64,000 bases of DNA from Bugula neritina (lineage: Eukaryota; Animalia; Bryozoa): contig OZ037768.1 of assembly GCA_964035545.1 (NCBI GenBank), forward strand, positions 10,944,741-11,008,740, given 5' to 3'. A program made the translations under genes and the position numbers. Positions 1 through 48,800 of the stretch are shown piece after piece (positions within the stretch are counted from its first letter, which is position 1; the number at the start of each line of letters is the position of its first letter). A model generated the notes under the pieces. That model saw nothing but the letters and a program-made list of their open reading frames with translations. It ran no database searches and had not been told where the DNA came from.

Positions 1-1328
1 ACCATGTAATCAGTCCATTTATCAGCTGACACCATGCTGACTGCAATGTCTCCATATCTGAGTTCTGTTGACGTATCATCCAGCCAATTCTGGTCACACC
101 TGTGCTAAATGCAAGCGAAATACTGTAAATGTCTTCGCTGTGACAATTAATTTCATTGCATCTCAAGCTTTTACTATGTGAAAAAATAAATGTGCACCAT
201 AGAGTTATTGAAATGGTAGAAAATGCTATTTTTAGATTATAAAGTCTGTAGAAGTGTCTTTTCAAAGCCAAATAGCGATTTGTTGGCATGACTCACCTTT
301 CTCTCCTCGACCACGGTGGTTACCATAACAACTGAACTTGTCTTTTGCTGCCAAATCATGAGCCAAAAGTCATTAATTGTAGCCGCTGTCGGCCCTGTCA
401 TAGCAAGTGTTAGTTTTGTTATAGACTTGAAAGCTCATATTCATTGGAATATATTTAAAAGTTTATGTTACCAAGTTTTGTAACAAATTTCATTACAATC
501 GCAGGATTCAATTAATCAATTATTCCCAATAGCTCACTATCTTCCTATCAACACAAAATGGTGATGCAATGAACTTAGGACTGCCAGGAGCATACCCCTG
601 TAAAAGGCAAAACAGACTTGAAATTAAAGTTTTTTCAGAATTATCAGAGTGCAAAAAAATACGTTTGTTATTCCCACTTGCTTGATAAATTTTAAAAGAA
701 TGGCGTCATTTTAAAACACCCACAATTCTAGATAATTCTAATGTACAGCTGCAGCTGATTAGATGAGGTGAGTAATTAGAGTTTCTAATCTCACTTGTAC
801 TGTGTTAGACAAGTTGACCCCAATTTGTTGATGATGTCACCAACGGCAGCCAATCATAGTGCTCCAAAATATGTCTCACAAATCATTTTGTTGATAGACA
901 ACATGATTTGTGTGATACGTTGTTAGGATCTTGAACAAAATTGAGAGTAGAAATAAAAAGTAGTTATTGCAAAAAATCATTTACCAAGGTAATTAATGGC
1001 TAATTTACTTGGAGTTATTCTCTCACCGATATGTAGGAGGCATTAATAAAGTCTGATTATTCTTCCGTCTCTCTTTCGAGTATAACTGGGAGGTCATCAA
1101 CTTAATTAAAAACAAATTTAATCTCCAAATGATGGTATTAAAAAATTTACAGAAACTGTTGGTAGCCGTAAAGAGTTTCACAAATAAAAAGAACTTTATC
1201 ACGCTGGTCCACAGAAGATGGTTGTTGGCAATTCACCAACCAGGATAGAGGCCCTCATATCGGCACTTTCTTTTGTTTTTTGGGAGGACAGCAGCTTCTA
1301 TGATGGGTTTTGGCAGCTCGGCAAGTGA
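1..1328 (-). pseudogene. Degenerate classical protein tyrosine phosphatase catalytic-domain exons (continue beyond the left window edge)
   Basis: Minus-strand exons give SLAELPKPIIEAAVLPKNKRKCRYEGLYP (~1241-1328; KNRY-like), VDDLPVILERETEE*SDFINASYIS (~1027-1100; DYINAS), GYAPGSPKFIAS (~536-597), GPTAATINDFWLMIWQQKTSSVVMVTTVVEERK (~297-394) and HRCDQNWLDD..YGDIAV (~1-105). There is an in-frame TAA at 1059-1057 and no phase-compatible donor after the FIAS exon. Confidence 0.8.
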
Positions 1329-2030
1329 CTAGTGAAACACACAACAAACTATTAACTGTTACTATACTTACCAACTTTGAAGCTATATTGTTTTGTAGCA
1401 AAAAACTCTTTTGATAACAAAATACAAACAAAACTAGTCAATTAAAAATATAATGCCAGTGCCAAAAATAATACAAATACCTTTTTTAATATATTACAAC
1501 AGTTATTTCTATAGCATTGTCCATATCTAATCTTTTTAAAGTGTGAAAAGAATTTTCCATCTACTATAGTTGGTAAAAACTTAACTGACAATTAAAACTC
1601 ATTTACAGCTAGAAGCTTGCTGCACAGACATTGAATTTGAAGCAGCGAATATGCTGGCATATTTAGTCTCAAGAAAGTGTAGGCTGTAGCCAAGTTGTTA
1701 TTATTTGTCTCCTTGCAGTAGAGCTGCAAGCCTTTTATATTTACTCTAGGTATAGAGAGTTGATAACTCCACAATATGACATAAAATAACATATACAATA
1801 AACAGGGATAACTCCCAAAGCCATGTTTTGTAAAATATTCCAGTTCATTCAAGAGTCTCAAATATCATCTCAAAAATACAAAAGACGATTTCATAACAAC
1901 AGATTGAATGCTAAATTTACACAAAAAGCTAATAAGCTAAAGCTGAAAAAAGATTTAAGCATGCCTATAAAATCTTGCCTTCTAAATTAGTAATCCTATA
2001 ACCATTGAATCACTAGGGCGATTTTGAAGA

Positions 2031-3375: not shown

Positions 3376-6300
3376 TTATGTAGAGCAAGACGTAGGGTTG
3401 CTAAAAGTAAAATGTGGAGTTGGTACAGGGGCACTCGTGAGAAAGTTTCCAGTCTCAGAGTTTTCCTCTTTCTGCAAGCCGTAATTTTGTGATTTTAACT
3501 CTTCAAAATATACTTCTGGTGGCTCAACTTCTTCACTAGTGTTTTTGGAATCGTCATTTGATGCTGCACCTGCAACATTCTCTTGTGACGTCTTCGGCTC
3601 ACTTGTATATTCCTTAAGTGGCTCTATTTTTGTGTAACCGTCTGCAGCACTCTCTGATATTGGACACAAGAGACATGTTACAATTATTTTACTGTAAAGC
3701 TGAAGCATTTACAAAAAAAAGTTATTGAGCATTACAATTTGCTTTGAGTTTCAGTTATGCTGTTGATAATGAAGTAGTCCCAGTAAAAATAAATGTTTGT
3801 TGAAAGATTATTGAGTAAAGAATTACCTGGTCGAATATTGCAGGAAAGATTGTTGTAGGGCAAACTCTGACTGCAGTCGTTAAAACGGCCATAATGGTAA
3901 GACGGTATGTGAGAAGCTCTGCACCCAGATTCGGGCTGCACGCAGACTACAGCTGGTGTTGAAGTGCAGTCTTCTGCAGTTGGTAGGTTCTGCATTTGTG
4001 TTTCAGCTATGTTGTCTGCACTGAAGGCTAGATGAACAAGAGACATGTTGTCTTGATAAAAATGTAGGTCTAATATACAGCATCACTAAAGTCATTTGTT
4101 TCATGAAGCTTCAGGTACTGCATTTAATTTTAGATTATCACATTTTGTAACAATTACTTGATAGGCATTTTAAGTTATACAGTAACAAATTAAACAACAT
4201 AATAAATAAAAGTTGGCAAATTGTACCTGAGTTTTCATTTCCGAGTTCATTAGCTTCTGTGCCAGAAATTAAAGTGCTTTGGGTAGAAACTTCATCTGCA
4301 AAAAATATTGAAACTAGTGAACTTCTGAATGCGAAAATTATGATAGCATAAATGCAGGTATGTATGTGTTGTCACTGTACAGTAGTAGTAACATTAGCAG
4401 TAGCAGTAGCATTAGCAGTAGCAGTAGCATCAGCATTAGCATTAGCAGTAGCAGTAGCAGTAGCAGTAGTAGTAACAGTAGCATCAGTAGCAGTAGTAGT
4501 AACAGTAGCATCAGTAGCAGTAGTAGCAACAGTAGCAGTAGCAGTGGCAGTAGCAGTAGCATCAGCATTAGCAGTAGCAGTAACAGTAGCATCAGTAGCA
4601 GTAGCAGTAGTAGTAACAGTAGCATCAGTAGCAGTAGCAGTAGTAGTAACAGTAGCAGTAGCAGTAGCAGTAGTAGGCTGGTTTACATGAAAGAAACTGC
4701 TAAGTTTGTTACCTTCTTTTGGCCCATTTGTTTGCAAAAACATTTCCATTCTTCTCTCAGTCGTTTTATCTGCAATGTATAATTTATTTTGTGTTATAAC
4801 ATTTCTTATTGAACAAATTTCTAGATTGCCAGTCGCAATCAATTTTTATTTAGTGGTTAGTTGCATGCGCTTATGGAAGGGAAAATTTAAAACCATTACT
4901 GTATAAACATATGCAATTAACTAAAATTATTGCTGTTGTATTATAATTTAAAATATTCGCACCAGATTTCTTCAGACGTTGTCTGAGCACCACTGCAAGT
5001 AAAATCCCAGTCACGATAACGAATAGGGACAGCGGAACTCCAAGGGCGACAAGAAACAAATTTTTTTCAGGTTCATCAGTAAGAATTTCAGGAGGCGACG
5101 TACTGGAAGTACAACCAAATGAACAGGTGTTGTGTCCACAATGCATACCATCAAATTGATATATCTCCTCCACTCCTTTACGGAATTTGAAGTTCAGTGT
5201 GACTGAAGTAACGGTATCAAGCTCGGAGTGATTATAGCTAGAAATGAATTGGGCTATTTTTTCATACTTTACATCGTTGCTGTTTGTTGTGTGTTTGGGT
5301 TGAATGATGAACAAATCATGTCCATGTCTTCCATCATAGTTTGAGTTAAAAGGCTCTACACTAAGAACACCCGGTTCCAGACTGTCTTCTGCATCTGAGT
5401 TAGGCAGCTTCACATTTTTAATGTGATTCTTAAGCAGCTGAGATAAATCCTCACTTCTGTTGTATAGCAGTGGACAAGTGTAGTTACCCTTGCAGATCTC
5501 AAGTGCATATGAGTGAAATCCATAGACAAACGCGTATAAGGCCTGTATTGCTAAAACTGCGTAATGTTCAGCCTTGTATACACCATATGGAGAATAGCCT
5601 TCAGATTCTAAGCATGGCACATTGTAGGGAGTGACATAGAAGCCTCTAATCTTGCACTGTCTTTTTTCCTGATACATCCTGGTAAACCACAGATTGTCAA
5701 GAAACTTTCCTTTGGCTCTAAGACCCTGCAGATGCTCGATAAATCTAGGCACCTGCGAAAAACACACAGCAATATATCTGACGCTGTTTCAACCAGTAGT
5801 TATGATTTAGAGATTCCCACTCACAAGAAGTTGTTCAATGAAGTATACTTCGAAAGACAAAGGCATTTACTGCGGTGTTGATTATCATAATTTAAATTTA
5901 GTAATAATGCAAAGGCTAAGAAAAGCCTTTTAACATCGCCACCATGATGCTAACATACAATGCCTATTTAGTAAACATAGTCCGAAGTTTAATAATCTGC
6001 CAAATAGGGACAAAAGCCCGACACAAAGTTTAGAGCTCAAAAAGGGTTACTTGAAGAGGAAGTGTCATGCTGGAAACAAATGAGCCTCTAAGCAGATCTC
6101 CGTATTTTTCCTTGATGGCCGGAGACTCATCAAACACTTCGAGTATGAGAAGAGTGTTTCCGCTGTGTATCCACCAATCTCGCCAATATCTCTGGTCTCC
6201 AAATTTAAGCCTGTCTAGCAAGTTTTCCAACGTCTACAAACATTTGTAACAACTAACAGAGTTTACTAAGATTTACAAGGTACCTTTTTAATACAAGTTA

Positions 6301-9300
6301 ATATAAAAATTATTATCTGTGTTTGGAAAAATTATGTTGCTTTCTAAAACAGAATGGTGTAACTTGAACGGACCTTTTCTTCACCGATGAATATCACAAA
6401 GTAACTGCCACTCCCAAGATTTGACATGTTATGCCATAGGTTATCGTAAGCCACTGTGTCATTCTTGCTGTAGTCTAATTCATACTCTTTTAGGAGACAA
6501 AGGTCATGTTGCTTCAATGACTTTAGTTCTTGTTTGATATTCTAAAATGCGTAGAAAGCAGCAATAGGACATTTTAGATTTATACTGCTTATACCTAAAA
6601 CTTGTAGTGTTGAGTTACTTAGTGACCCCTGTGATGTAATGGTTAGGGCACCAGCTTGCAAGTTGGACGTCTGCGGCTCGAACCGCAGACTTCTGACTTA
6701 CAAACTGGTGGGCTAACCATTACACCAAAGAGGCTACTGGGTAGTATCAACTGTACAACACTGAATTTATAGAAATAGCCAACTTTAAATTATCTGTTCT
6801 TACTAAAATGAAATCCCTTCAGTGTGTGAAATCAACATAAAATTAAAAGTTTTAAGCTTTTTCTGGTCATAAACTTCAAGTCCAATTGCTTACTTTTGCC
6901 CCATTGGCTCCATACTCAGAGTTGGTAGAGATTAAAACATATGAGTTAATTTTAGCTTTGCCGGAATCTTCCAGGAACTGAACAAACTGATGCACATTCT
7001 TAGCTAGTTTGCTGAAAGAAGGCTGGACTCTCAGAAAGTGGGTGTTCATGTTAACTTTGTCATCCAGTTTTGAAGTTGAAGCCCCATACGAAACTTGGAT
7101 CAGGTGAGCTGGCATCAACAATGGCTGCATCTGCAGAGTAAAATATTATATGTTTATTCATTATATCCTCAACTCCAGCATCCATAGTAACTAAATACAT
7201 ATATAGCAAAAATAAACACCATTCAACAGTGGTTTAGAGCTGCACTAATATGTAAAACATGCTATTGAATCTTACAAATCTTACAAACCTTTGATATGCT
7301 CACCTGATAAGTGGTGTGACTGGAGTAATCTCCCACTAACCCCACAACCTTAGAACGGTCTAAACAATCTCCATATTTATTACAATAGTCTCTTGTGCCG
7401 TATAGAATATCAATCAGTGTTTTCTGGGCAAGAGCTGAGTTGAAGCAAGTGTCAAATATGAGTAATCCAATGTTCAAACCTTTGTCACCAAAGATTTCAT
7501 TGAGTCGTTTTCGAGCAAAAATGACTGCTTCAGATCTCAATGTATTTGTCCCTTCCTTATCAAAATCTACGCAAGTCAAAAGGTCAGGATAGTCGTTATG
7601 CCTACAAAATTGTCATTTTAAAGTGCAGTTTATATTGTATGTATAGATATGCTAGCAGCATTAAAATACGTCAATTTTCTTGTTACACTAAAGTATTATA
7701 TACTCCTTTCTAAATTAATATAAATCAACACTAAAAATAAAATTTATAAGCTGAATCCAACTATGTTAAATTCATGCTTGCATGTTATACATATGGCGGG
7801 TAAAAATATAGAGATCTGAAATTGTATGCACGAAATTTATGGCTAATCGATACTTGAGGACTTGTGTAAAGTGTGTTAGTTGCTAAGATACAATAGAAAA
7901 CTAATTTAAACCACTTTGAAATTATATAGGATTGTAATTGTGATGTAGGACTAACCTGTCAAAGATTGGCACAGTGACAATAAGAATATAATCTCCAGGT
8001 AGATAAACGTAATTTCTTTTATTGATCTGTTTAGCACACATTGCCCTGCAGTGTACATCAGTGCACCAAGATCCAGGGTTGCTATTGGACGTAGCATTGA
8101 AGTCCCACCCACCAGAAGCTGTGTAGAGGGACTACAAATATATTATAGTATTTTATACTTTATTTGCAATTGAATTTTTGCTGTTATTATGTTATCATGA
8201 TAGTTTTAAGCTGGTAAAGTTTGCTTTTTTCCAGCATCTGTTTCTTCAAGCTTATAGTTTGTGGTTATATGCAGATGATACAGTTGGTTAATATAAAATG
8301 CAGATACATTCAGTTCTAAGGATAGCAATTGTTTCTTAGCACAAGTACTAAGTCCACCAACCTGAAGACTCTGAGAGACGTAGAATATTGAAGGTTCAGG
8401 CAATAGAGCTGTAGGTGTGGCATTGTAAGCCTCTCGATAACTAGAAGTATTTTGAGGATACTGAGCTTTCATCAACTTTAAACTATTGAGTACACTCAGC
8501 TGTAGGTCACTACATCTTCTGATGTCATTTCCGCATTGCGTTTTTAGAATCTCCCCTACAGTTTCACTTTGCAATTGAAGAACAGACTCCAGTTTGCTGA
8601 CGTGAGGGGTTTGTGAGTCATTGTTGTGTCTCACAACGTAAACTTTATCTTTCTGGTAATTTGCTTCGATAGAATTGTCAGCTTGTGTGGATATTATCCA
8701 GTGCATGCTCTCATCATCATTGTTCAACAAGTTTACTAAAACAAACATAAACTGTATTATAATAAAAATTTGTAATTTACTATATAAATTTGTGCAGCTA
8801 CATTTGTTTTATGTTCATGGTTGACTACGTAAAAACAAATAAATATAATACATATTTCATTTATACACAAAGCACCCAATGTATTAAAATTTAGTAAAAT
8901 AAAACAACATACTTGTTTAAATTTGAATTAATCTGAGTTTTAAAAACTTTAATAATAATTCTGTATTATGGAAAAATAAGAAATGTTTTATAAAATCAGT
9001 ATAGTATGAAAGAAAACTAAAACTCACTGGTAGTTGTTTTTGCCATTGAGACAAATATTGTGGCTCTAGTTTTGTCCTTCTTGATGATTTTATCAACCGT
9101 GCCAGTTTCGTCATCACCGGATATTTCAATATATTCCTCCACACAGACGAACTGGTCTCTTAGTTCCTTTTCTAGCAAATTCTTCAGTTCTTTACTTGTT
9201 GAGTCTAAAGTGTGAGCTACTGAGACGTAGTCAAAGTTCAGTTTAACTGCCAGCTCTGCTATAGCCTTTGGAAAAAATTGACAACTTATTAAGCATTTAG

Positions 9301-12300
9301 CATGATTAGAGTGAATAAATTTTAAATTTAGAACTAAAAAAGTATGTTAAGTTATTCGTGCTTCTTTAGCACAGATATTGCTGTTGCTGCATTAATTTTA
9401 AGATGCAAGCTTCCAATTATATCTATTTAAAAATAGAATGAAATTTTAAAATCTCGGTTTGAATGATGGGCAGTAAGAAAATCTTTTATATTTATATTTT
9501 AATTTGTTTAAAGAAAGTTGAGTTTAAAAAATATATTTTCATTCAGCTAAATGCTGACTAACCTAGTATAATTCTAACTAAGTGTATATAAGTAAGTATA
9601 AGTATAAGTAAGTGTATAAATATAAATAAGTGTAGACATACCTTTGCACGCTGACTTAGTTGAACACTGCCATCAAACACATTAGATGGTAAGGCAGCAG
9701 GCAGATTCATCTCCCCCAAGAAAATTATTGGCACTGAAACATCTGGCCAGAGATTTTTCATGTCTTCATAAACAGTCTTTGTGAAACTAATGACTCCTGT
9801 GAATGAGAAATATTGACTTAGCACTCTTGCGTTAACTAATCAAAATAGAAGGGTGGGGTACTGCAAATTCTTGTCTCCCATCTTTATAAGAGTGATTTGA
9901 TTGTAAGATATTGCACATGCAGCAATTTATATTCTAGTTAAGTTTTTTCCTAATTATATTGAAGCCATACTAGAATAACTAGATAGTAGCATTTCTTGAA
10001 CAGCTTTATCTAGCTGCATTGTGTGCTAAATTAAGTTAGTGACTGTTACGCATTGTTTTTATAAATGAATTTCAACTTTGTATGCAATCTTAGAAAAGAA
10101 ATAAAATTAAAACTTTGAATAAAAAGTGTATAAAAGTGTGCATTTGTTTTATATTTACTTTTTTAAAGAGGGCAACTAATTTTGTAGAAAGAAATTATGA
10201 AAGTTTTGTTTGAGGATCAGCTTGTGGCTATGTGAAGACAACTTACAATTATAGCACTGTATTTAAATTTAACAAGCCACTGCAATGAGGCAAAAAACTT
10301 AATATACTTGGTATGTATGGGAGACAAATTAGATGTATCATATATACATTGTATGTCTATAAAACTAACACAATTCACTATTCTATATTACTATAACCGG
10401 ATTAATTGAATTTGATGCAATAAAACTACCAAATATTTTTTAATAAAGCTAATATTTTTACAGATTATTCAACTATAGTTTAAAGCGAATTCAAAGTTTC
10501 CTGAATGTACTATGTACTGTTTTAATATTTAAATATTCTTGTAAGTGCAATGGAAGGAATTCTTGTTTAATAGTCTAAAGTAAATAATTAAATAAAGTAT
10601 ATAGAAATAATACATACAGCATATATTAGATCATTGTTGAAAGCTTATTATAATAATATAGAAGCGATAAAGCAATAAATAGCATATATAATAATACATT
10701 ATTGGAATTTTAACAAACACACAATAACTATTAAAGTGCTGTTGAAGTTTAATGTAATACTATACAATACATACTAGATATAATAATAAATACATATTAT
10801 ATAAGACATAAACACACAATACCTATTAAAGTGCTGTTGAAGTTTGCTGACTGACTAATGCTGTCTCCAGGACACACCTGGGAGTTGACGGAATACCTTG
10901 AAATCTCTGCTGCCACGTGTAACCTGGTAATACTATTGCCATCATAGTCAGGTATATACTCCACTCCTGCAGGTAGAAATATGATGTTGTTAGCACTTGG
11001 TACAGTATAGATATGTGATAGTAAACATACACTGTAGTGTTGAGTTTATCCAGTGGCCCAAGTGGTGTAGTGGTTAGTGCACCTGCTTGCCAGCTGGAGG
11101 TCTTAGGTTTGAATCCCAGTACGTGGGGGCAAACATTTTATAGATACACACATTTAGTGGAATACTTTTCAAAGTCAAAAATTACTTTTAATGACGCTAG
11201 AAGTTTCTAGACTTGGTAGATAACTTTAATCAATCATTATAAATGTGTGAGTAGAAAAACAAAATTAACAGGCCAAACCACAAATCCGCAATAAAACTGA
11301 AAAATATTAATCATCCTGTAATTGAAGTTTAAGCTGATTATACTAGCTGCAGGAAGTAAAATATTTTTAACAAGAATTTAAAGAAATATTTCACTGTTTC
11401 TCTAGTATTTTGCATTTTTGTGTGTAGGGTCACTCAAATGTATGTTTGTTTAATAAATAGTATTTGCCATTTTCTAATTTATAGCTGCCAGTTTTAAAAG
11501 TCAGTTTTACAAACAAACAAACTAAAAATTATGCCTGGTAACTACTACCCACTTTTTAATATTTGTAGATATGAAAATGCTTTGTCATGACCTAACTCAT
11601 CGTAGCAATACTGACGAGACAATGTTTTTATTGATGTAAGGTGAACACAGGATAAGCAAATGTTAATATGGACTATGAAATGCAGTGTTGTTTCTCTTCA
11701 GCCTCTTCCAAGTTCTTTTTGGAGATAAAATAGTGAAATGAGTACAAAACTTTATATATAAAACAAACAAAAGAACATAGAAAACGATTCAAGTTATTGA
11801 TTCTGTTAAAGCTAGAAGAAAGTAGTCAAATGCAGAAATTACTGTCAAGTGGAGACAATAACTACAGTAACTCAGTTAGTCACTACATTTTCTGTCATCC
11901 ACACTGTTTTTATATAGAAGCTGTTTATGAAAATCATTTTTTAAGTTTTCATTAAGCATTTAAATTGACTCACCAATTTTAGTAGCATTGGGCTTGGTAT
12001 TTAGTTGCTGGACAATGTTGTTAGTGTGTATCTCCATCTCAGTCTGTCCAGTAACGCATTCAGAACTGCTGACTCCAATCACCATAAAGTGCATCTGGAT
12101 ATCTGAATATACATCAATTTTAACCGTACACCAAGCTTACATATGTGCATGTATAGATAACTTCTGTTATACTATTGAAGTGTATTTCCAACACTTAATT
12201 TATAATACTCCATTATAAGGCATGTATTATAGCAACTGGAATTGTGCAATTAGTAACATTTCTAATACATAGATTTTAACTGTACACTAAGCTTACTAGT

Positions 12301-13524
12301 TTTACTGGTTTTTAAGTTATCATACTATTATAACTTATATTATATTAAGCACCTGTGTGCATTAAGGAAATAGATGAAACCTTGCATTCGGACGATACAG
12401 TTCGATGATAAAAATCAATTATGGAGACTTAAAGTGATAACAGATTATTTGAAGGCTTGTAAAAAGACTACACACTCTCTAAAATACTCAATATTGCAGT
12501 TCCTAAACATATTATTGCACCTTATTGCATATGTTTCTAAATGAAGCATGGTAGATTAACTGTCAAGTATGAAAAAGATGAAAAACATTAAACATTTCGT
12601 TATTTGATGCGCTTTAGTGAAATTGCATCATAAAAGAGAATATTCTTAAAAGGTGAAATATTGTGTTGTTTATTCAAAACTATTTTACACACTCATACTG
12701 AAGGCCTAGATCTATGCATTGAAAAAGAATGTCCACACACTTTATTTTACTCTACATTTCTATTTTAGGCACAATTCCTGGTGCAAGTAAATTGGAATAC
12801 GCATAATTACAGTGAATCATATGGTATACGCAGATAGTACATAATAAAACACGACTAATTATATTGATACTTTACATTTATAACTCAATTGTAACAAATA
12901 GGTGACTTTTAGCTCTACTGAAGGTGCTACAAACTTCAGGTTACAGCAATTATTATAGATGTACTAATGTATGTCATTTTCCTAGAAAACAAAAGTTTGC
13001 GATGATATGTTATTTAATGAAAGACAATGTATGCTTTTATTCAACACTTGGCATGAGAGAGATGAAAATGTTTGTCACTTTCAGATCCATTTTATTCACA
13101 AGACACACACACACACGTACACGCACACGCACACGCACACGCACACGCCACACACGCCACACACGCCACACACACACCACACACCACACACGCTAATAGC
13201 CGTATCACAAGCATTTTATTTAAATGAAAGAAATTTTAAGGTAAAAGTCAATTCAAACATATAGACAGTTCAGTTGTATTTATTGCGTGGATTTTTACTA
13301 CAATCAACAAGGTAGAACAACTTAGTTGATGAGTACTGTGGTTATCACACTAAACACACACCTTATAACATATTATACACTACTCGTACAACACGTGAGG
13401 CCAAGCTGCATATATATTTAGTGTATTTGGGTAACTTACCTGCATGACCTTGATGACCTAACAAGTTGCAGTTTGCTAAACTCCATGTGCTTATCAAGCT
13501 AATAAATGTTAACATAAAATTCAT
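3376..13524 (-). CDS. Single-pass membrane receptor with two tandem Venus flytrap (ANF_receptor / mGluR-like) modules, about 15 exons
   Basis: Signal-peptide exon 13440-13524 (MNFMLTFISLISTWSLANC). VFT1 exons at ~11974-12136, 10823-10966, 9642-9797, 9027-9265 (AIAELAVKLNFDYVSV..FVCVE) and 8362-8735. Linker at ~7956-8122. VFT2 exons at ~7304-7602 (IGLLIFDTC; VVGLVGDYSS), 6895-7130 (QVSYGASTSKL..FLRVQPS..SEYG), 6385-6541, 6051-6232 and 4963-5752 (NLWF; TM LFLVALGVPLSLFVIVTGILLAVVL then RQRLKK). Phase-1 tail exons at ~4227-4295, 3827-4069 and 3376-3653 end in TAA, overlapped by AATAAA. Confidence 0.8.
4377..4675. repeat. (GTA/GCA)n trinucleotide-type microsatellite, intronic
   Basis: Read directly; it lies between the TM exon and the next tail exon. 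Confidence 0.95.
6603..6757. mobile_element. Palindromic tRNA-derived element (two inverted SINE-head halves)
   Basis: The left arm ...gatgtaatggttagggcaccagcttgcaagttggacgtctgcgg pairs imperfectly with the right arm ccgcagacttctgacttacaaactggtgggctaaccattacacc, centred on CTCGAA. Confidence 0.7.
11033..11130 (+). mobile_element. tRNA-derived SINE-like head, same family as 6603-6757
   Basis: Same tgtagtgttgag leader. A-box tggtgtagtgg, anticodon-like arm cctgcttgccagctgg and B-box-like ggtttgaatccc. Confidence 0.65.
13103..13192. repeat. CA/CACG microsatellite
   Basis: Read directly. Confidence 0.95.
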
Positions 13525-15469: not shown

Positions 15470-16436
15470 CTAGCTCTCAGTTTGGAAGTCAGCATTGGCC
15501 TTCTTCTGAATGTTGCATTCATCACCAAGAAGGTTTCGTGCATTTCTTTGTAATGATAAATTCCCTTGTCGTTCCAGCGTATCTTGACCAATGAGAGGGT
15601 CAATTTTCTGATAACTTTTCATATAACTTTCTACGGCAACATTGAATGATTCTTTTGTATACAGTGAAAATAGCATCATTTTATTATATAGAAACACATA
15701 TTTTTATTGATTTGAAAGCAACTGGTAAAATATTATGCTGATGCAAATGAAATACAAGAAAAGCTGTACTTGTTGAAATGATCTATAAGCATCCCAAGTT
15801 GAGTGTGGATGAGTGCACTATAGTTTGAACTTTGGAGCCTTGAGCTCAGAGTTGGGGGTTCAAAGTTCCAACATAAACCTCTAACTCCAATCTTGAAAAT
15901 CCCAAATTAATGCTCTCAGTCACCCCCAACTCAGAGCTGCTGTTAGAAAGATTCAAAATAGCCAATTGACCAAAGTATCATCTGAGTGCTTAATTAATAA
16001 ACACTTTATGCTCACCCTCATCAGACAAGAAGTTTCCAGAGTTTCCCCGGATTCTAGAGAGAGTATTTGAGATATAGTTGCTATGAATGGTACTGGGACC
16101 TGGAGATGGATAGACTGTAGACACTGGTTGTCTGCTGAAAATTGGTGTTGTGCTAACCCCCTTTGAAACACTTCCTTGTTGCTCTTCGGTTTCTTGAACG
16201 GTAGGTTCAAAGGCTAAATTATCTGCTGAATACATACAACTTGATGGCAATAATTAAAAGTATAAGTTCTTTGATTACACCTATTTGTATGTAGCTCTAA
16301 AGGAAACAAAACATTTTAAATTCTATAAATCAATATGCCTTCCAATTGCATTTTACTGATGGGCAGGACTGAAAGTTTCACCTTCTGCATTTTCCTTTTC
16401 TTTACCATTTGATAAGCTTTTCACAAAAGTTATATC
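15470..16436 (-). CDS. Uncharacterised low-complexity protein (3' exons; start not found)
   Basis: Three phase-1-compatible GT-AG exons at ~16382-16436, ~16016-16223 and 15470-15651, ending ...ADFQTES*. No recognisable domain. Confidence 0.45.
15842..15938. repeat. Short inverted-repeat (MITE-like) element
   Basis: gagctcagagttgggggt ... acccccaactcagagct. A loosely similar palindromic stretch lies at ~60708-60780. Confidence 0.5.
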
Positions 16437-30800: not shown

Positions 30801-33800
30801 AGACACTACAACTAATGGATCTTATTTCTGGAGGAAAAATTACACAACAGGTCTGAAGGAGATACTGATAGGCAACTATGATATCTGCTTATTTGAAAGG
30901 CTAATGCTGTCCATAGAACAACACAGAGTCAGCAAAAATACACGTCCCTGTAATTTTGAACTGGAGAAATAGCTAGCTTTTAACTTTTCCATTTTTACTT
31001 TCTGCAAACCTGAATCTCAGATTACAGATTAGCTGGCAGTCACTTAGATCCAGTGAGCACTCAGCAGTGCTCTGGTTTGCCAGAGTTTTGTTAATGATAG
31101 AAACAAGTCAAACACCTGACCAAATGGGCCAAAATTGCTCTGCAGTTTATCCCCTGCCGATCCAATAGTTTAATTGCTCACCAGCTTTACCAACAAAGTA
31201 GCACAGTTGAGGCCTGCTAGAATGATGACTTTTCATTTTAAAAAACAAACATTTGTACCTAAAAGAAACTCTTATACTAACGCTTCGAGTAAAAATCTGT
31301 TCCCCCAACCAACATGGTTTGTTTTCTACATTCACATTATTTGTAAATGAAGAACATTATTACAGCATGAGCATTGTATGGCTGATTAGCCTCTAAATAC
31401 ATCACAATAGCAAGGTTACATGGTCAGCATTACATATGTACCTGGAGGAAGGTTGGACAGCAGATACACCCTCCGAGGGAGGAGGCTCATCTGGTTTGAT
31501 ATTAACAAGAAGGTTGATGCAAGCCTCCCTAGTTTGAGCATTCAGGCCTGAGTTCATGAGTCTATAATAAAATAAAGTAGAGAATATTTCACCGATGCTG
31601 AATAATGAATTGTATTGCAGTCGCTAAAATATTGCTAAAACAACTGGGAGAACGCTTACCGCTGCAACTTATCATGCAACTGTGTTGATTTGAGCATTGC
31701 TGTTGCTCCGGTGAGATTCTTGAGCATCACGTGTAGAGTCTTGGCACATGAACACAGAGCCTATAAGTAGAATAGAGTGATGGCTTATACAGCTAAACTA
31801 TTCCCAAAACATCAATTTTAGCAAGTTATTGGAAATTTCCTTACATTTTTAGAGAAAAGGTTTTACAGTCACAGCATGAATAAAGCGTTTAAAAGATGAA
31901 TGTTCAACTGCCTGTTAACTCACCCTCAATATTAATATTCAAATTAACCTAAATATTGCCAAGGTGATTACATAACATAATTAAATTTATATTAAGCATG
32001 TCCAATAGACCATGTAAAACTCAGCCAATCAGCGAAGTGTACCAGGTCAATGTCTTACCATTGTAACTGATATAAAATTCTGCAAGTTCAATTGCAAAAT
32101 GCATGCTTCTAAAAGCTAGTTGTGCAACTTTTTTTTCATGCATTATTTAATTTCATATCTTAAATTGATGACTCTTGAAATGAATTTTTAAAATGTCTAA
32201 ATTAAGTGTTTATAAAATGCAATTAAAAATTTCATGTCTAGAAAAATGACCTGGTACACTTTTGCAACTTAAGGCCAATTATTACATAACTGCCAGCTTA
32301 GTAGTTATTTGTTGTTGCAGCTTGAATGGGTTATTGTTTAGCATTGGAAGCTTGCAGTAAACATCTGTGAATTTGGTACATGACTTTGATTGGCTGGTTT
32401 TTGAATGGCCCTTTAGTATATGCATCTGGATGGCTAAGTAGTGTAGACTCCGCCTACATCTAGCTAATGTACAGTAGCCAATCCACAGTAGTATTACAAA
32501 ATTTCTGTTTAACAAATGAAATATTCTGGTCATTTGTCTTGTACTTTACAATAGTAAATATTCTATTCAACTAGAATGTTATTGTATGTGAGCCATGGGA
32601 ACTACTAAGAGGTTAAATCAACCACCCATGCTGGTAATATTGTAGCTCGCAGTAATAGCAAGTCCACACCATATAAATATACACATAAGCTATTATGTGC
32701 AGCTTATGAATGCTGAAATGACCCCATTTCTTACCTTCAATTTGATTAAAAAATTGTATTACATATTCTGCCACTTCTGCACCAGGAACTTGTTTTCCTT
32801 TTAAATTTTGAAAATAGTGGTCAGTTTCTGCAGCAGCCAACATCCACAATAAACAACGTAAGCTTTTAAATAAACTATAAATATATGAAATATTAGTGTG
32901 GAAACAATGTAATTTATTCATTGCTATGATGAAAAATTATAAGAATATTATATAAAAGCTAGATATAGATTTCTAGTAAAATGGCACAGGTAAAAATAAC
33001 ACATTTTTACTTCAAATTCTAAATTTCATCAGTCACCAATGGTGGCTGTAGATTACAGAGAGCACAGCAGACTATCATAATCATAATCATAAGGATGGTC
33101 AGCCCACTGAGCAAAATTCAACTCCAACCCTTCATTTGGGTTACCAATGCACAAAAGCATATAATGTAAGACGCACAAAAAAACAGTGGTTTTAATGAAA
33201 CATGTGAAAAAAGTGAACAGAAAACGTCTTCAACAGAGTCAGCTGATATAGAGCAACAGAACTCATCTGACAGCCATCCTCATAGTCAGACTTCATCAGA
33301 AGTAACTGAGTTACCAGAATCATCAACTACTCAGAAAAAAAGATCTGCACATTCTATTGATAGACGAAAATCAAAAGTTGGAAGAAAAGGCTCAAAAAGT
33401 TCCACGTTTAAACAAAAAGCAACTATTGAAAAAGTAAAAGTTTTTAAAACTTTCACCACTACAGATGAGCGAACTAAATTCTATACTGGAATTCCTACAC
33501 GTTCTCTATACTATTTTTTAGCAAGGTAAAAATTATGATTTTCTTATTGCAAAGATAGACTATGGTTTATTACAAATAAACAATGCAAGTCTCACTATGC
33601 TAAAATTTGTACATTGAATAAATTTGATGTGTAGTAAAACTGTCATTTTAATTAAATTTGTTGCAGTATGAGTGTATCATTTATACATTTCTTATTAAAG
33701 ATGTTGTTTTATGTAAGATATTCATAAATACCACAGCGGTCATCTGCATGCTTTGATTTATTTAGTTTAGGGTTTTATTTAAACAAGCAGCAGTCTTTTA

Positions 33801-36800
33801 TTTGTGGACAAATTGACTCACTTTCTCCAGGAAAAGTAAATTGTTTTGACTTAAATTTTCCTTGGTTATTTTAAAGCTTATCAAAAGTGGCCTCCTAATC
33901 TAATTTTTAGCTGAAACTAACTCAGTGTTTAAAACTAAAATGGTTTACACTTGTTACTAGTTTCACTTATTCACAAGCATCATTAAATGCTATTCTAGAA
34001 ATAATATGGGTTTGAATTAGTTATAGTATAATTATAAAATGAAGTAATAATTGTTTGCCCACAGTATTTGTTTAAACTCATGACTTCATTCAAAGGATGT
34101 ATTCATACAACTAGCTTATTATGTACTGTTACAGTATTATGTAACACATGTTGACACACATTACATTCTGTTTGGATGGTGATATATTGGGTCAAGCCTT
34201 CAACTAGCAGTTCTTGAACTTCATAGTTATTGCAAAATATAACTGAAGCTACTTACCAGAGGGTAAAAACTGCTGAATGAATACAAACTAAGCACAAAAT
34301 TTATTTAGCACATACATTATAATTTGAATCATAATTTAATTTTCATTCTTTGTTTACTATATTTAGATTTATATGTCCGAAGATGAAAGTTCTCACTTTC
34401 AGAAAAAAAGTTAACAGGACAAGATAAACTTTTATTGGCTTTGATGAAGCTGCGTCAAGATTTCCAGTTTCAAATGCTTGCTGGCCTTTTTTATATCTCT
34501 AAATTAAGTTACTGCAAACAAAGTTGATTGCTAACCTTCGAATCCATGTCAAAAGAGCAATCAAAAGAATAAAAGAGTTCAATATTTTAAATGGTCCTGG
34601 AGGTGTGAACTTGGTGTTGGCACCTCTATTAGACAAGATTATGATAGTTTGCTGTGCTCTCTGTAATCTACAGCCACCATTGGTGACTGATGAAATTTAG
34701 AATTTGAAGTAAAAATGTGTTATTTTTACCTGTGCCATTTTACTAGAAATCTATATCTAGCTTTTATATAATATTCTTATAATTTTTCATCATAGCAATG
34801 AATAAATTACATTGTTTCCACACTAATATTTCATATATTTATAGTTTATTTGAAAGCTTACGTTGTTTATTGTGGATGTTGACTGCTGCAGAAACTGCCC
34901 ACTATTTTCAAAATTTAAAAGGAAAACAAGTTCCTGGTGCAGAAGTGGCAGAATATGTAATACAATTTTTTAATCAAATTGAAGGTAAGAAATGGGGTCA
35001 TTTCAGCATTCATAAGCTGCACATAATAGCTTATGTGTATATTTATATGGTGTGGACTTGCTATTACTGCGAGCTACAATATTACCAGCATGGGTGGTTG
35101 ATTTAACCTCTTAGTAGTTCCCATGGCTCACATACAATACCATTCTAGTTGAATAGAATATTTACTATTGTAAAGTACAAGACAAATGACCAGAATATTT
35201 CATTTGTTAAACAGAAATTTTGTAATACTACTGTGGATTGGCTACTGTACATTAGCTAGATGTAGGCGGAGTCTACACTACTTAGCCATCCAGATGCATA
35301 TACTAAAGGGCCATTCAAAAACCAGCCAATCAGTCATGTACCAAATTCACAGATGTTTACTGCAAGCTTCCAATGCTAAACAATAACCCATTCAAGCTGC
35401 AACAACAAATAACTACTAAGCTGGCAGTTATGTAATAATTGGCCTTAAGTTGCAAAAGTGTACCAGGTCATTTTTCTAGACATGAAATTTTTAATTGCAT
35501 TTTATAAACACTTAATTTAGACATTTTAAAAATTCATTTCAAGAGTCATCAATTTAAGATATGAAATTAAATAATGCATGAAAAAAAAGTTGCACAACTA
35601 GCTTTTAGAAGCATGCATTTTGCAATTGAACTTGCAGAATTTTATATCAGTTACAATGGTAAGACATTGACCTGGTACACTTCGCTGATTGGCTGAGTTT
35701 TACATGGTCTATTCTATTGACATTAATGTGCTCCATTAGTTTAGAAAAATGTTTTAATTTTAGCTACATGTACCGTTTCATAATTTATAACAAATAAAAA
35801 AGCAATAAGCCTAGCCAGATGCTATCACCTTTAAAACAGAGTATAGTTTAATCACACTCACAGAGTCTGCAGTAATTTTAAACATTCTATTGACTAGAGT
35901 AGAGAGAGTATCTGTCCAGGGGTGAGTAGAAGGTTGCTTTGAGTTGAGGGAAACCAAAGTGCTGATAAGTTGACAGGAACTCTCGATCAGAGAGTCACTG
36001 TTGACACTGAGTATATCTGTCAACACTTTCACTATGTCGTGCTTCATCAGTAGTGTCACTCTCCTAGACCATAAGTGTTATGTTATTTATTTGCTCATTA
36101 CTATACAGTGTCTCACTAAGCTGCCAAGGGTCCCAAAATCTCGATTTGTGACATAGTAGAATTTACCAGATTTAACTAACGGATCCACAGCTTTGACAAT
36201 TACCAGAAAATTTCATTGAATGTAAGAGCGTATCAGCTATACTCACTTGACTTCACCCTGAACATAGGTGTTGAATATGTGGAGGGAGAGAACTCTATTC
36301 TGTAGAATAGTAGATGTCCGCGCCACATACACCAGGTTGATGGTGAAGGTCTCCAGAGAGTCAACTTCCTGTCTGACGCTAAGCAGAAATGCCACATCAT
36401 GGTGGATATAAATGCTAATGCATCACTTTATCATAATAACTCAATTCCTGACAACAAATACTTAACCACAAACATAACTCACAAATGCTAGAGTATGGAC
36501 ACACTTTGTAGAAAGAAAACAACATTTTCACAAAACAAATCGTGTGACTGAAAAGGGTGAGTTTCACTTATGTCGTTTTTCCAGAATGTATTCATTAAAC
36601 TCACTTAAATTTATTTTAATTGAACAAAAGATTCTTTTGATTTAAATGTTAATTCAAACTTAAAGTTGCAAAGCACAGCAGCAGCAAATGTTTTTAGAAG
36701 TTCAACTGAACAAATAAATTGACATCAAATAAAAATTGACTGTAGTACTATCAATTTATACATATACTGGCAGCCACTACTGCAACAAAGCTCTCGCATA

Positions 36801-42800: not shown

Positions 42801-45800
42801 AGTAGTAACTATGATAGGAAAAGTGCTGTTCAAAAATATTCCAATATTCTCACTGCAAGCAACAATCATAGTTGACCAATAAGAAGGCAATTAGGCATTT
42901 TCTGCCATACTTGCATCAACATATAATTGGTTGAATTCACTAATTGATTTAGCATAAAATACTAACACAATGTAGTGTGATTCATTAATAATTAACAAAA
43001 TATCAGTTGTATGTGTGCATCATTTGATTAAATATTCATTCCTGATGAGTAGCTTAATACTGGGTAGAGAAGCTTATGAAACAAGTTAGAATGCTCAGCC
43101 AATCAACACTCACACACAACAACCAATAAAATTGATTCACGGCTGAATACAAAAATATCTCAATTTGCTAAATTATTGGATGATATCCTAGCAGCTATAT
43201 GTTTATCATCCATGGAGTGCACTTGATTCTTAACAACATTCACACTGATTAGTATCTAGTGAGTGTCATCAAAGATATTAATTTAATAATTACATATCAT
43301 AGATATTACTAGCACAATAATTACAATTGATAATGAGTACTTAATAGTCTTATTTATTTTTAAACCTAATGATATTACAAAACAAAAATTAAATTAATTA
43401 TTAGTCTAAAAAATATTTTATTGGTAGTTTCACTAATAAATTAACCTCAGAAAGAATGAAAAAGATTAAATAAAACTGTTTCTATAATAATATACTCAAG
43501 TCTGCGACAAGTCTGCATATAGAAATCATAATTGAAAAAAAGTTTGGTGAACAGTCAACAATTCAATTAATTATAATTTGGTTTACTTTCTTCAATTATT
43601 TATGTTCATTATCTTCATACTTCATACTAATTTAAACTAGACAATCATATAGATGCCAATTGAGCTGAAACCTGGTTGACTTGGATTCAATCAAAACCTT
43701 GAAATTAATCAGATGATCTTTAAAATATCTAAACCTGTCGTAGCCGGACCATTCAATGAAAGCCATCTCTAATAACTAAACCTTGATCGCTGTTACCATT
43801 GAACTATAAGGTTATAGTTTCAGTTCAGTGGCTGTTACCAACGGCTTTTTAAATTTAAAACTCTTAATTTTTGAAAGTTTGGAAATTTATATACTAAAAG
43901 TATTCTAAATAGTAAAAGTTAATTAGAGCTTAATATTTCACCTATCTCGTGATGGCCACACAATTCCAACAAGCAACAATTTAATAATCAAAATCTAGAT
44001 CTTAGGAATAGGGTTGGCTAATGTCCTCGAAGCTACAACTGTTCAAGCAGCTTAATCACATCAAAGATAATTATTCTTCTGTGAGGCACATTCTGTTGTA
44101 CATATCAATGGAATGATGTAGATAATTACTAAATTCACTTCTATTTAAATTATTTTACATATATGCAACTCCATAAATTTGGTTCCAACGTTCTAATTGC
44201 TACAATGAAACTAGAGAGCTAAAAATCTATTTTGCTATCTTTTCATGGCACAATACACTACTAAAATCTTTATTTTACTTGTTAAAAAACCTAGTGATTA
44301 TAAATAATTATTGATAAAATAATTGACCTTAGCATGACTGTACCAATAACAGTAGCACTAGCTAATATAGTGGAAATAAATAGAATCTAGCATCTCTAGT
44401 GTATTTACCTGTATTGATAGCAAAGGATCTTACACAAAGATTCAGCAAAGTATTGACTATTTACACAAAACCATCACGTCATTGGCTTTCATGAATTTAC
44501 CAATAATCAATGGTTACAGGTACCCTGTGTACGTTTGCAGATATTCACATAATGCATTCAGAGCTAGTAGAAACTGGCATGGAAAAGTATCATTAGTTGA
44601 TATTAGCTTTAGCAGAGTCAATTATTTTTATAAGTAGATAGTTTCAGTAGTAACTTGTATAGTTATTTTGACTATGGCAGCTTACTGTCCAGATGGTGGA
44701 GAAGAGGTAAGCCAGATTAATTAAAAACAGACTTTAAAAATAAGTTGAAGTTATTTTAAGATGTTAAACATGTATGAAATTATTTGCAGGAGGCAATGGC
44801 GACAGCAGCTGTGGTGCCTGGCGACATGAATGAGAGTTTTACAAAGGAATTTCTCTCCTGCTCCATCTGTTGGGAACTATACGATGACAAAGCCAGACAA
44901 CCTAAACTGCTCGGTTGTCATCATACCTTCTGCAAGGGATGCTTAAAAAAGATTTTACGAGGAAGATCATTCCTTCAGGTAACAACTGGCTTAATTTATG
45001 GTAGTTTCTCGCTGTAAGGACACTAGAACAGTAGAAACTGTATATTCCAACGATTTGCTTTTATGAAGTAACACGTTCAAAATGAAGTTAAAACAACCTA
45101 TTCTGTAAAACATATTGATTATATGTTTTACAGAATAGCTTATTTATAGATCTCTATAAATAAACACCAGAATCCCGAGTGTTCTCAAAATATGAAAACT
45201 AAAAGTTAAAACACTGTCGAAAAATAATTAAGTATTACATCCTATTTGCAACATTCTATTGCTTTTGCCTTTACTTTCAGTGTTCGACGTGCAGAAAAGA
45301 CACTTTAGTAACAGATGGAATTTCCTCTTTGCAAACTAATTTTTATGTCATGTACATGAAGCAAAAGTTCGGAGATCAGATGAAAGCAAACCTCAATGTT
45401 TGCTACAAGCACTCACTTCAGCCACTTTCTTTCTTTTGCAAGTAAGATTCTAGTTTTAAATCACTTGTCATTAAAAACTAATGATCCAACATAACTAGAG
45501 AAAAAATTTTAGTAAAAAAGCATATGCCTTTTCAGTTAATCTAACATTATATATGAGTTTGAAATAGAGTTTACTACAAACTTTTTGAAAATTTAGGACC
45601 TGCAAGCAAATGGTGTGCAGAGACTGCATAGTGCTTACACACCCTAAAGCGGAGGGTCACGAGTTACAAGAACTGAATGAGGTGAAGGCTGAGTATGTTG
45701 TCAGCTTAGAGCAACTTCGTATTAAAGTAGAAGATGGAGTCTGCAGACAGCAAAACAATCTGTCATGTCTGCGAGTAGAACTGGACTCAATGGACATTGT

Positions 45801-48800
45801 CACTGAGGTATCGTACACCAATTCTAATAAACCAAAGGTAATTTTGTGCAAAGGACCAAACACAGTTGGGTAATTTGAAAACACATTTTATTCAATTTTA
45901 CAATGTGATTTTTGCGCAGTTATTGGGAGCAAATTCCCCTGTGCTTTGCTGGCAAATCAAATCGCTCAAACTGGTGCATTCCTATAGGATAAAGCGGTAT
46001 TTGACTTTTAGCAAGCTTATTGGTATAAACTATTGACAAAGTAAAATACCCTTATGGCAGCTTTACTGAAATACTTAAATATCAATATTAATATTAGAAG
46101 AGTATAACAAAACCTAGGGGTTAGAGCATTTGCCTAGTAAGCACAAAATAGGTCTTTAGCCTGATTCAAGAAAAAACCCTTTCCAGCAAGGAATGGCAAC
46201 TATAAACTTGCTTGAGTGTGAATGAGCATAACAAAATCATCAGGTACAATAAGAATAAAATAGGAAATAAAGTTATTGCAAACTCTTCAAAATTTAACTT
46301 CTCTTATTACAGGTTGCCATGAAAGAAATCGACAAGTCCTTTGACGCTTTAGTAGAAGTGGTAAACACTCGTCGTCAGCAGGTCAAGGACATACTGAAGG
46401 AAACCCACGAAACTAGACACAGAGCTGTAAATGAGCTACTAGTCGAAGTAGACAATCAGACTGCACAACTTAAAGCTATAAGAGAACAATTGGATGATGC
46501 TACATGCAAAGGTAAGTTTTACATGCAAGCATAGACTCGAAAAGCATTACATTAACAAAAGAAAAGATTTTCACAAAAATAAAAATGAAGCTTATAAATA
46601 AGATAGGTTTTTGGACAAATTTAATACAAGTTTAAAATATTTTTTATTAAAGTTAATGTAAATTGTTGCAAAACTTATAGCAAACATTATTTCACACATT
46701 TTGCCAGGCCAACTACGAGATTTAGTAGATGTGGCAACGAATCAGGATTTGCAACAGCAGATAGCAGCAATGATTGATATTCGAGAGCTGAACCTGGGAA
46801 AAAATTATTTTACCTATAATGCCAAAGATGCTATAAAACAGTTGCAACAACTAATGGCAAAAACTGGTGAAATTAAGGATTTATGCATGCTTCCGGCAAA
46901 AATCAGCATAGAAAATGATGTGGCAACCGCTTGCTTAGAGACAAACATACTAATGAAGGTGAGCTACCTGGTTCACTTAAGACAGATATACAACATAACA
47001 GTGTTTTAGTTTTGGCATTTCATTGGTTGACTATTTCATGTAGATGCTATAAATTGAACTATTTTCGCTTTTTCGGCCATAGTTTTTTGGAAGTTAGTCA
47101 ATGTTAATGAGCAATCATGAGGTCACCACTCAATCCAACTTTTTAACAGCTCATATGATCTAACAACGAATAGATTTTATCATGTAGACAAACTTGGTAT
47201 TTTAAAATTAGTTTCTTGCGATAATTTCAACCTGCGTCCCAAACCAAAATTTACTGAGCAAACCAAAGAACTTGGGCTATCTCAATTGCTCCACTACGGC
47301 ACCAAAATGAAAATTTGAACAAGTTAAAATGTCGACGTTAATTTTTCCAGGACTTGCATATCAATTCTAACCGACTCACTTCCATTGCTTGACTTGACTA
47401 CCATTGACACAATGTTGCTCAGTGCTTATAATAATCAATATCTAATAGTAAATAAGAATTATTGCTAATGTATGATGCACTTGATAAGTGTTGGTTGTAT
47501 TATACTTCAACTTTGTGCTAAAGATTGTACATGTTTAGCAGATCTGTCTATATCATACTAATCTTATCATTGGTATTTATATGTGTTTTAAGCCTGTTAT
47601 ATGCTAGTAATAATATAATATTAATGTTCAATATATGGAAAACTTTATAATACAGCATTGGGATGAATATCTCCCAACTATATATTATTTCATTGTTTTA
47701 TAATTTATAAATTTCAACTGTACAGCCACTAAAATGTAAAAGTGATCTCAAAAATGAGCCAAGTGTAAAATCATTATAAAAATCAAATGCTCAAGGTGAA
47801 CATTGGCGAGGCAAATGCCTTTCAGTCAAATCTCCACAAAAATTGAGCCGCCTGCTTGCATCATGGCACTGTCTCTAGTTTGAAACAATTCACTAAAATA
47901 TTTTTGCTGGCAGAGCAGGAGACAATTTTACATCTTTTTCCTTTAGTTTAGTTTTAATTTACTGGAGGTGACAATCTCACAATAGGACCACAAATCTTAT
48001 ACTCTATAGTAAATAAAGTCTATTCAATTCTAGTAGGAAAAGCTAAGGTTCACAAACCAGAGTTAATAAGGGAGTTGATACTTGTAAGATTTTCTTTAAT
48101 ATATATATTAAAATGTAAAAAGTGAACAGTCCATGCCAATAATAACAAACCCTTCTTGATCAACAGAAAATAAACAAGATTTAAATGCATAGAGCTTGAA
48201 TTCATTGGGTGCATATGTTTATGTAGAATTACATGCTCAAATTTATTAGTCAGCTTTGCTGATCATTTTGTCCTCTACTGTAAATTCAAACCAGCGAAAT
48301 AATATTTTTGCTATTTCAATTGCAGATTTCAACGCATACTGAAGAGCCATTGCCAAGATACCCATTGACCATGGCTATAGTAGATCCAACAGGAGACGAG
48401 ATACAATGCGAGACCACAGACAATCATGACGGTACATACACAGTTGTGTTTACACCTCAGATATCAGGAGCTCATCTCTGCACAGGTAAACAGCAACACA
48501 CTTTGACCATGTCTTCATGCACGAGGCTATTGCAGCCTCTACAGCTGTAACATGACTTTTTAGGCTTGATTCCAGAAAATTGTTTCAATTTTTTAGCTAT
48601 TTAGAGTTATAAACTAACTTGTAAGATCTATACGATACTTAATCTACACTACCAAAAGCTATTTATTTCACATTGGAAATTAAAATATCAACAAAGATGA
48701 TAGACATGCTTATACTACAGAGTTAGACTGCAGATTTAAAGTGTAAACTAATAATCTATTTGAGCATATATTCCATGGCTGAAAAGGTTTCAATAGTACC

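What the first reader, a model, noticed from the sequence alone, without database searches (positions are those of the whole stretch)
3376..13524. Tandem-Venus-flytrap single-pass receptor with no 7TM and no catalytic domain
Seen: the spliced model gives a signal peptide, two mGluR-like VFT modules each closed by a short Cys motif (SWCTDVHCRAMC; CGHNTCSFGC), a single TM helix and a ~200-aa low-complexity tail. Known: VFTs are normally coupled to a 7TM domain (class C GPCRs), an ion channel (iGluRs), a guanylyl cyclase, or a tyrosine kinase (Venus kinase receptors). Inference: a class-C-derived ectodomain has been redeployed as a type I, adaptor-coupled small-molecule receptor.
Basis: partly seen in the sequence, partly recalled or inferred. 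Interest (0 to 1): 0.8.

Follow-up and report, generated by a model that had tools for sequence, protein, structure and literature searches.

The report
Double-flytrap single-pass receptor gene
This bryozoan gene makes a cell-surface protein that carries glutamate/taste-receptor-type ligand-catching domains on one membrane helix, with no G-protein-coupling or enzyme part; the same layout occurs across clams and oysters, and I found it described in no paper.

Summary
The gene is real: 16 GT-AG exons (13524-3376, minus strand), 1193 aa. RNA-type contigs of a closely related haplotype show 11 of 15 junctions, including VFT1-to-VFT2 and TM-to-tail. There is one TM helix and no 7TM, kinase, cyclase or phosphatase. 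The phosphatase exons downstream are a broken duplicate of another gene. The genome is probably Bugula neritina, and GenBank's near-identical model (KAF6030576.1) is mislabelled 'GRM5'. The first module is shortened and lacks the pocket motifs. At least 9 paralogues were found. The same VFT-Cys-VFT-Cys-1TM layout occurs across bivalves, where both pockets are near-invariant and a juxtamembrane Tyr motif is conserved. These modules are related to those of multi-VFT class C GPCRs. Most likely it is an amino-acid-type sensor signalling through tyrosine motifs; the rival is an NPR-C-like clearance or decoy receptor. Neither ligand nor signalling is shown. No paper describing the family was found. 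This scan has already reported the family from at least eight other loci of this genome.

The parts
13440..13524 (-). Exon 1: ATG and putative signal peptide (aa 1-28)
   Evidence: conserved at 86% in the C5 paralogue and 93% in KAF6030576.1; signal peptide judged by eye
8036..12102 (-). Module 1 (exons 2-7, aa ~29-407): shortened, degenerate VFT closed by Cys motif 1 (8036-8068); pocket motifs not recognisable
   Evidence: ANF_receptor E 0.014 on exon 5; exon 5 scores 9-12 bits on the bivalve VFT profiles versus shuffle maxima of 2.5 or less, other exons at background; ESM features 0.94 to ANF_receptor clusters; AlphaFold low confidence; junctions 3-4 to 6-7 in RNA-type contigs
5111..8035 (-). 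Module 2 (end of exon 7 to exon 12, aa ~408-943): mGluR/CaSR/T1R-type VFT closed by Cys motif 2 (5111-5140). Pocket: Ser 7319-7333, Ser 7074-7088, Arg with Asp replaced by Phe 7014-7031, Tyr 6909-6920, Glu 6135-6149
   Evidence: ANF_receptor 78.5 bits and mGlu5 E 1e-14 on KAF6030576.1; VIA Z 35 to mGlu4 and mGlu3; residue table
4985..5059 (-). Single transmembrane helix (exon 12)
   Evidence: KD 2.62, the only hydrophobic segment in the exons scanned; exon 12 splices to exon 13 and on to exon 14 in all four runs
3376..4769 (-). Cytoplasmic tail, exons 13-16 (~200 aa, S/E/T/N/P-rich); Tyr motifs YNNL 3846-3857, YTKI 3625-3636, YFEEL 3496-3510; stop at 3376
   Evidence: YTKI kept in two C5 paralogues and in the second haplotype; contigs run 672-700 nt past exon 13 versus 548-581 coding nt expected
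1..1556 (-). Not part of the gene: broken duplicated piece of a receptor tyrosine phosphatase (in-frame TAA near 1059)
   Evidence: Y_phosphatase E 3.7e-9; 85% DNA identity over 1.7 kb to a C5 phosphatase gene (L032) that has its own TM and an open frame at that codon
14133..16609 (-). Co-duplicated 3' end (tail exons) of a neighbouring paralogue, upstream of the gene
   Evidence: 80% identity to C5:1526426-1528812; tail ORFs at 15470-16250 match C5 copy 1

Best explanation
An intact, spliced member of an unnamed lophotrochozoan family of type I membrane proteins (VFT-Cys-VFT-Cys-1TM-Tyr tail) related to multi-VFT class C GPCRs. Shown: architecture, splicing, family and pocket conservation. 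Inferred: the membrane-proximal flytrap binds an L-amino acid or similar small ligand; flytrap closure or dimer rearrangement repositions the single helices; the disordered tail passes the signal on through tyrosine motifs bound by SH2 adaptors or non-receptor kinases. In Bugula the distal flytrap has probably become a spacer or dimerisation/recognition module and no longer binds amino acids.
For: Junctions and single TM. pN/pS 0.34 against the C5 paralogue. All 9 paralogues examined have one TM after the Cys motif, most with candidate tail frames carrying YxxP or YxxI motifs. No 7tm_3 match lies near any of these loci. 30 bivalve homologues of 950-1250 aa carry ANF_receptor/Peripla_BP_6 only, many on 3.7-4.4 kb transcript-sized contigs. 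In 15 bivalve proteins the S/T/R/D/Y/E anchors are 14-15 of 15 conserved in both modules. 14 of 17 bivalve tails have YxxP, 12 of them 14-21 aa below the TM, and the other 3 have YLT at the same place. Bivalve module 1 is sister to module 1 of 5xVFT-7TM receptors (100/99).
Against: No ligand or signalling data. This copy's tail has no YxxP. Its YTKI and YNNL motifs are equally AP-2 sorting signals (own knowledge). The Asp anchor of VFT2 is Phe here and Ala in two paralogues. The tail evolves fast. The grouping of Bugula with the bivalve family is weak (83/78, long branch).
Confidence: 0.5

Rival explanations
1. NPR-C-like clearance, decoy or co-receptor: it binds ligand and internalises it through YxxPhi motifs, or heterodimerises with multi-VFT class C GPCRs or other VFT receptors and tunes them.
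For: NPR-C is a one-VFT, one-TM, non-catalytic receptor that clears ligand and poisons NPR-A/B by heterodimerising (PMC10334801). Some bivalve tails are only 19 aa long and end in YLTV. Related multi-VFT GPCRs exist as possible partners.
Against: The dominant bivalve motif is YxxP, which is not a YxxPhi sorting signal. The Bugula tails are long and carry several Tyr motifs.
Confidence: 0.25
2. A rapidly diversifying recognition or adhesion receptor (immune, allorecognition or settlement cue) that uses the flytrap surfaces for proteins, peptides or microbial products rather than the amino-acid cleft.
For: Tandem arrays and recent segmental duplication. The first exons of module 1 are too divergent to be found in distant paralogues. 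Pocket residues are eroded in Bugula.
Against: The pockets are near-invariant across bivalves. Exons 8-9 of VFT2 are the most constrained (pN 0.015).
Confidence: 0.2
3. A truncated class C GPCR or mis-modelled gene whose true transcript continues into 7TM or phosphatase exons.
For: Junctions 14-15, 15-16 and the stop were not seen directly. All tail introns are phase 1. Phosphatase exons lie 2 kb downstream on the same strand.
Against: Exon 12 splices to 13 and on to 14 in four runs. Contig lengths fit exons 14-16 plus 90-150 nt of UTR. The phosphatase piece is a broken copy of a separate gene and is absent behind the 90%-identical paralogue. No 7tm_3 match lies nearby.
Confidence: 0.05

Closest known systems
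Class C GPCRs (mGlu, CaSR, T1R) and invertebrate multi-VFT class C receptors (XP_069135753.1 scallop, 5 VFTs; XP_035691717.1 amphioxus, 3 VFTs)
   Same: VFT fold and amino-acid pocket motifs; the short 3-Cys linker after each VFT is shared with the multi-VFT receptors
   Different: No nine-cysteine domain, no 7TM; one helix and a disordered tail
[quoted passage not shown]
   Same: VFT ectodomain, single TM, no catalytic domain
   Different: One VFT of the NPR lineage (Z 25.5 versus 35 for mGlu), peptide ligand, short tail; here two modules of class C type
Venus kinase receptors (PMC3703292, PMC2680970)
   Same: Invertebrate single-pass receptor with a class-C-like VFT that responds to amino acids
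   Different: One VFT and a tyrosine kinase domain; here two modules and no kinase
Trypanosome receptor adenylate cyclases (PMC6027212)
   Same: Two VFT domains on a single TM helix
   Different: Cyclase domain inside; protist family, no relationship tested here
Schistosoma SmGBP (PMC3206071)
   Same: mGluR-type VFT expressed without 7TM
   Different: One VFT, no C-terminal TM or tail

Membership tests
Class C GPCR / mGluR (GenBank label 'GRM5') | VFT of ANF_receptor type | tested here: met
   Module 2:
Class C GPCR / mGluR (GenBank label 'GRM5') | 7TM domain (7tm_3) | tested here: not met
   No Pfam hit on KAF6030576.1; one hydrophobic helix; no 7tm_3 near the locus; TM exon splices to tail exons
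Class C GPCR / mGluR (GenBank label 'GRM5') | Nine-cysteine domain (NCD3G) | tested here: not met
   No NCD3G hit at E 0.1; only a 3-Cys motif
Class C GPCR / mGluR (GenBank label 'GRM5') | Five amino-acid anchor residues in the cleft | tested here: inconclusive
   VFT2 keeps 4 of 5 (Asp is Phe); none recognisable in module 1; bivalve relatives keep all; numbering from own knowledge of mGlu1
Venus kinase receptor | Intracellular tyrosine kinase domain | tested here: not met
   No Pfam hit; no kinase motifs in six frames of the window or paralogue regions
Natriuretic peptide receptors (NPR-A/B/C) | NPR-lineage VFT, with a cyclase or a short tail | tested here: not met
   All 55 PDB sequence hits are mGluRs; NPR-C ranks 25th by fold; no cyclase
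Receptor tyrosine phosphatase | PTP domain in the same transcript | tested here: not met
   PTP exons are a broken duplicate of another gene; the direct RNA test across the repeats was not run
Unnamed bivalve VFT-VFT-1TM family | Two VFT modules with 3-Cys linkers, one TM, Tyr-motif tail | tested here: met
Unnamed bivalve VFT-VFT-1TM family | Single origin with the Bugula genes | tested here: inconclusive
   Bugula VFT2 sister to bivalve VFT2 at 83/78 on a long branch; no AU test run
Adaptor-coupled receptors | Ligand-dependent tail phosphorylation and SH2 binding | not testable with these tools
   Motifs only

The most novel reading that the evidence does not exclude
An undescribed, lophotrochozoan-wide receptor class in which class C flytraps sense amino acids or related chemical cues, possibly two ligands in series, and signal without G proteins or intrinsic enzyme through phosphotyrosine adaptors. 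In bryozoans it would have expanded into a chemosensory repertoire with one flytrap retired.
Probability: 0.35. Interest if true: 0.8.

Novelty: new variant of a known kind. Interest (0 to 1): 0.55.

Why it matters
If it signals, class C ligand sensing has been uncoupled from G proteins in a conserved animal family. That would add a candidate route for nutrient or settlement-cue sensing in filter feeders, including farmed bivalves and fouling bryozoans. [quoted passage not shown] The soluble ectodomains make ligand screening directly testable.

Tried and rejected
Fusion with the downstream phosphatase: rejected. Hidden 7TM exons: rejected. RNA contigs coming from the C5 paralogue: rejected, since they share 30 of 31 variant letters with the L030 haplotype and 18 of 40 with the paralogue. 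A word search with exon 12 found only that haplotype, and an alignment-seeded search for a full-length bryozoan protein found none; the GenBank model turned up through cluster members. hhalign of module 1 to the bivalve profile was weak (13%). AlphaFold on module 1 was uninformative, and alignment A4 was too poor to use. Eight paper searches found no description of the family. Reads were laid only on 4700-10690, because the 3' side holds long repeats.

Full report
Observation. I rebuilt the model exon by exon: 16 minus-strand exons from ATG 13524 to TAA 3376, every intron GT-AG, phases consistent, 3582 nt or 1193 aa. The genome is 216 Mb in 321 contigs. The cluster of a near-identical protein contains KAF6030576.1 'GRM5 [Bugula neritina]', 1193 aa, which is 86-100% identical exon by exon, so the source is probably this bryozoan. 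That record differs from my model at the end of exon 3 and around the exon 6-7 border, where RNA supports my borders. Exons were used by reference and the public record stood in for the whole protein.

Splicing. Contigs of four RNA-type runs (three studies; RNA status is the tool's guess) lie on exons and skip the predicted introns 4 to 12, including the weak exon 6 donor and the VFT1-VFT2 link. Their loose ends match the end of exon 3 and the start of exon 14 with one mismatch each. They are about 96% identical to the window and share 30 of 31 variant letters with a metagenomic Bugula haplotype (L030) but only 18 of 40 with the closest paralogue, so they come from this gene's counterpart in another population. 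Two contigs extend 700 and 672 nt beyond exon 13; exons 14-16 need 548-581 nt. That fits the stop plus a short UTR but does not show it.

No 7TM or enzyme. Hydropathy gives one helix, in exon 12. Pfam on KAF6030576.1 gives only ANF_receptor above its cut-off. The genome's 7tm_3 matches lie far from this locus and its paralogues. Phosphatase exons at 1-1400 on the same strand (E 3.7e-9) looked like a possible continuation. They are an 85% copy of a separate C5 receptor phosphatase that has its own TM, they carry an in-frame TAA, and they are flanked by duplication junctions near 1560 and just left of the window. The whole locus is a segmental copy of the C5 cluster: tail of copy 1, all of copy 2, then broken phosphatase and flytrap pieces. 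The gene is under purifying selection against copy 2 (pN/pS 0.34).

The two modules are not equal. Module 2 matches mGlu5 at E 1e-14, folds with mostly good confidence and aligns best to mGlu4, mGlu3, CaSR and T1R (Z 35-30; NPR-C 25.5). It keeps the Ser, Ser (for Thr), Tyr and Glu anchors and the Arg, with Phe in place of the Asp (mGlu1 equivalence from the alignment and own knowledge). Module 1 is about 380 aa against about 505 in bivalves. Only exon 5 scores on flytrap profiles, ESM features place it with ANF_receptor clusters at 0.94, and AlphaFold is unconfident apart from an alternating strand-helix pattern. It is probably a degenerate flytrap without recognisable pocket motifs.

Family. 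At least nine paralogues were found on C5 and C2. Each has the Cys motif, one TM and, in most, candidate tail frames with Tyr motifs. The YTKI motif is kept in both nearest paralogues. The representative search returned an oyster protein and multi-flytrap GPCRs. Searching with the oyster protein XP_048763362.2 gave 30 bivalve proteins (Ostrea, Saccostrea, Mytilus, Tegillarca, Mercenaria, Mactra, Potamilus, Ruditapes, Solemya) with flytrap domains only; all but two incomplete-looking models have one C-terminal TM and a 19-182 aa tail. The oyster model folds well (pLDDT 80) and matches mGluR ectodomains. In bivalves both pockets are 14-15 of 15 conserved, and 14 of 17 tails have YxxP, mostly just below the membrane. 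In the module tree, bivalve module 1 is sister to module 1 of five-flytrap 7TM receptors (100/99), and Bugula VFT2 groups weakly with bivalve VFT2 (83/78). The short Cys motif also follows the flytraps of those GPCRs. A class C origin is therefore well supported. The direction of change (loss of 7TM) and a single origin with bivalves are inferred.

Mechanism. Best reading (0.5): a small-molecule sensor, probably for amino acids, that signals through tail tyrosines and adaptors. Rivals: an NPR-C-like clearance or decoy receptor (0.25; PMC10334801), a diversified recognition receptor (0.2), a truncated or mis-modelled GPCR (0.05). No ligand or signalling step is shown.

Known and new. It is not an mGluR, VKR, NPR or receptor phosphatase by their defining domains. 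Partial precedents are NPR-C, trypanosome cyclases (PMC6027212), VKRs and SmGBP (PMC3206071). Eight paper searches found no account of this family, though the library lacks most subscription journals. One receptor survey explicitly discarded sequences lacking TM regions (PMC6307864). Earlier notes of this scan report the same family at eight or more other loci of this genome. I reached my reading before opening them and did not check their brachiopod and gastropod claims. Verdict: real, a new variant of a known kind, interest 0.55.

Noticed in passing
window 1-1556 (-) and about 2.2 kb left of the window (L010): Broken receptor tyrosine phosphatase exons followed by broken flytrap exons 4-7: rearranged pieces of the C5 cluster
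   Followed up: yes
L032 (C5:1506971-1510057 +): Apparently intact receptor tyrosine phosphatase with its own TM about 10 kb upstream of the C5 flytrap genes; ectodomain not read
   Followed up: partly
P0010, P0019, P0024: Class C GPCRs with five (scallop and an unnamed transcript) or three (amphioxus) tandem flytraps before 7tm_3; I saw no description of them in the searches run
   Followed up: partly
L030:1212: Second haplotype or copy with an in-frame deletion of about 147 nt in exon 12 and an exon 16 that is 11 codons longer; the RNA contigs share its SNPs but not the deletion
   Followed up: partly
window 44784-50127 (+): RING, B-box-like, filamin-like and NHL-like frames: a TRIM-NHL-type gene (RING confirmed by Pfam, the rest by eye)
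   Followed up: partly
window 60049-61877 (+): N-acetylglucosamine-kinase-like gene (BcrAD_BadFG hits) with few, long exons
   Followed up: partly
window ~29500-59600 (-): Long gene with helicase-like and Tudor-like frames (TDRD12-like by eye); the TRIM-type gene would lie inside it on the other strand
   Followed up: no
window 32613-32921 (-) and 34798-35106 (+): Two near-identical frames in inverted orientation, probably an inverted repeat or mobile element
   Followed up: no
window ~11040-11130 and ~6600-6745: tRNA-like SINE-type insertions in introns 2 and 9, also present in paralogue introns
   Followed up: no
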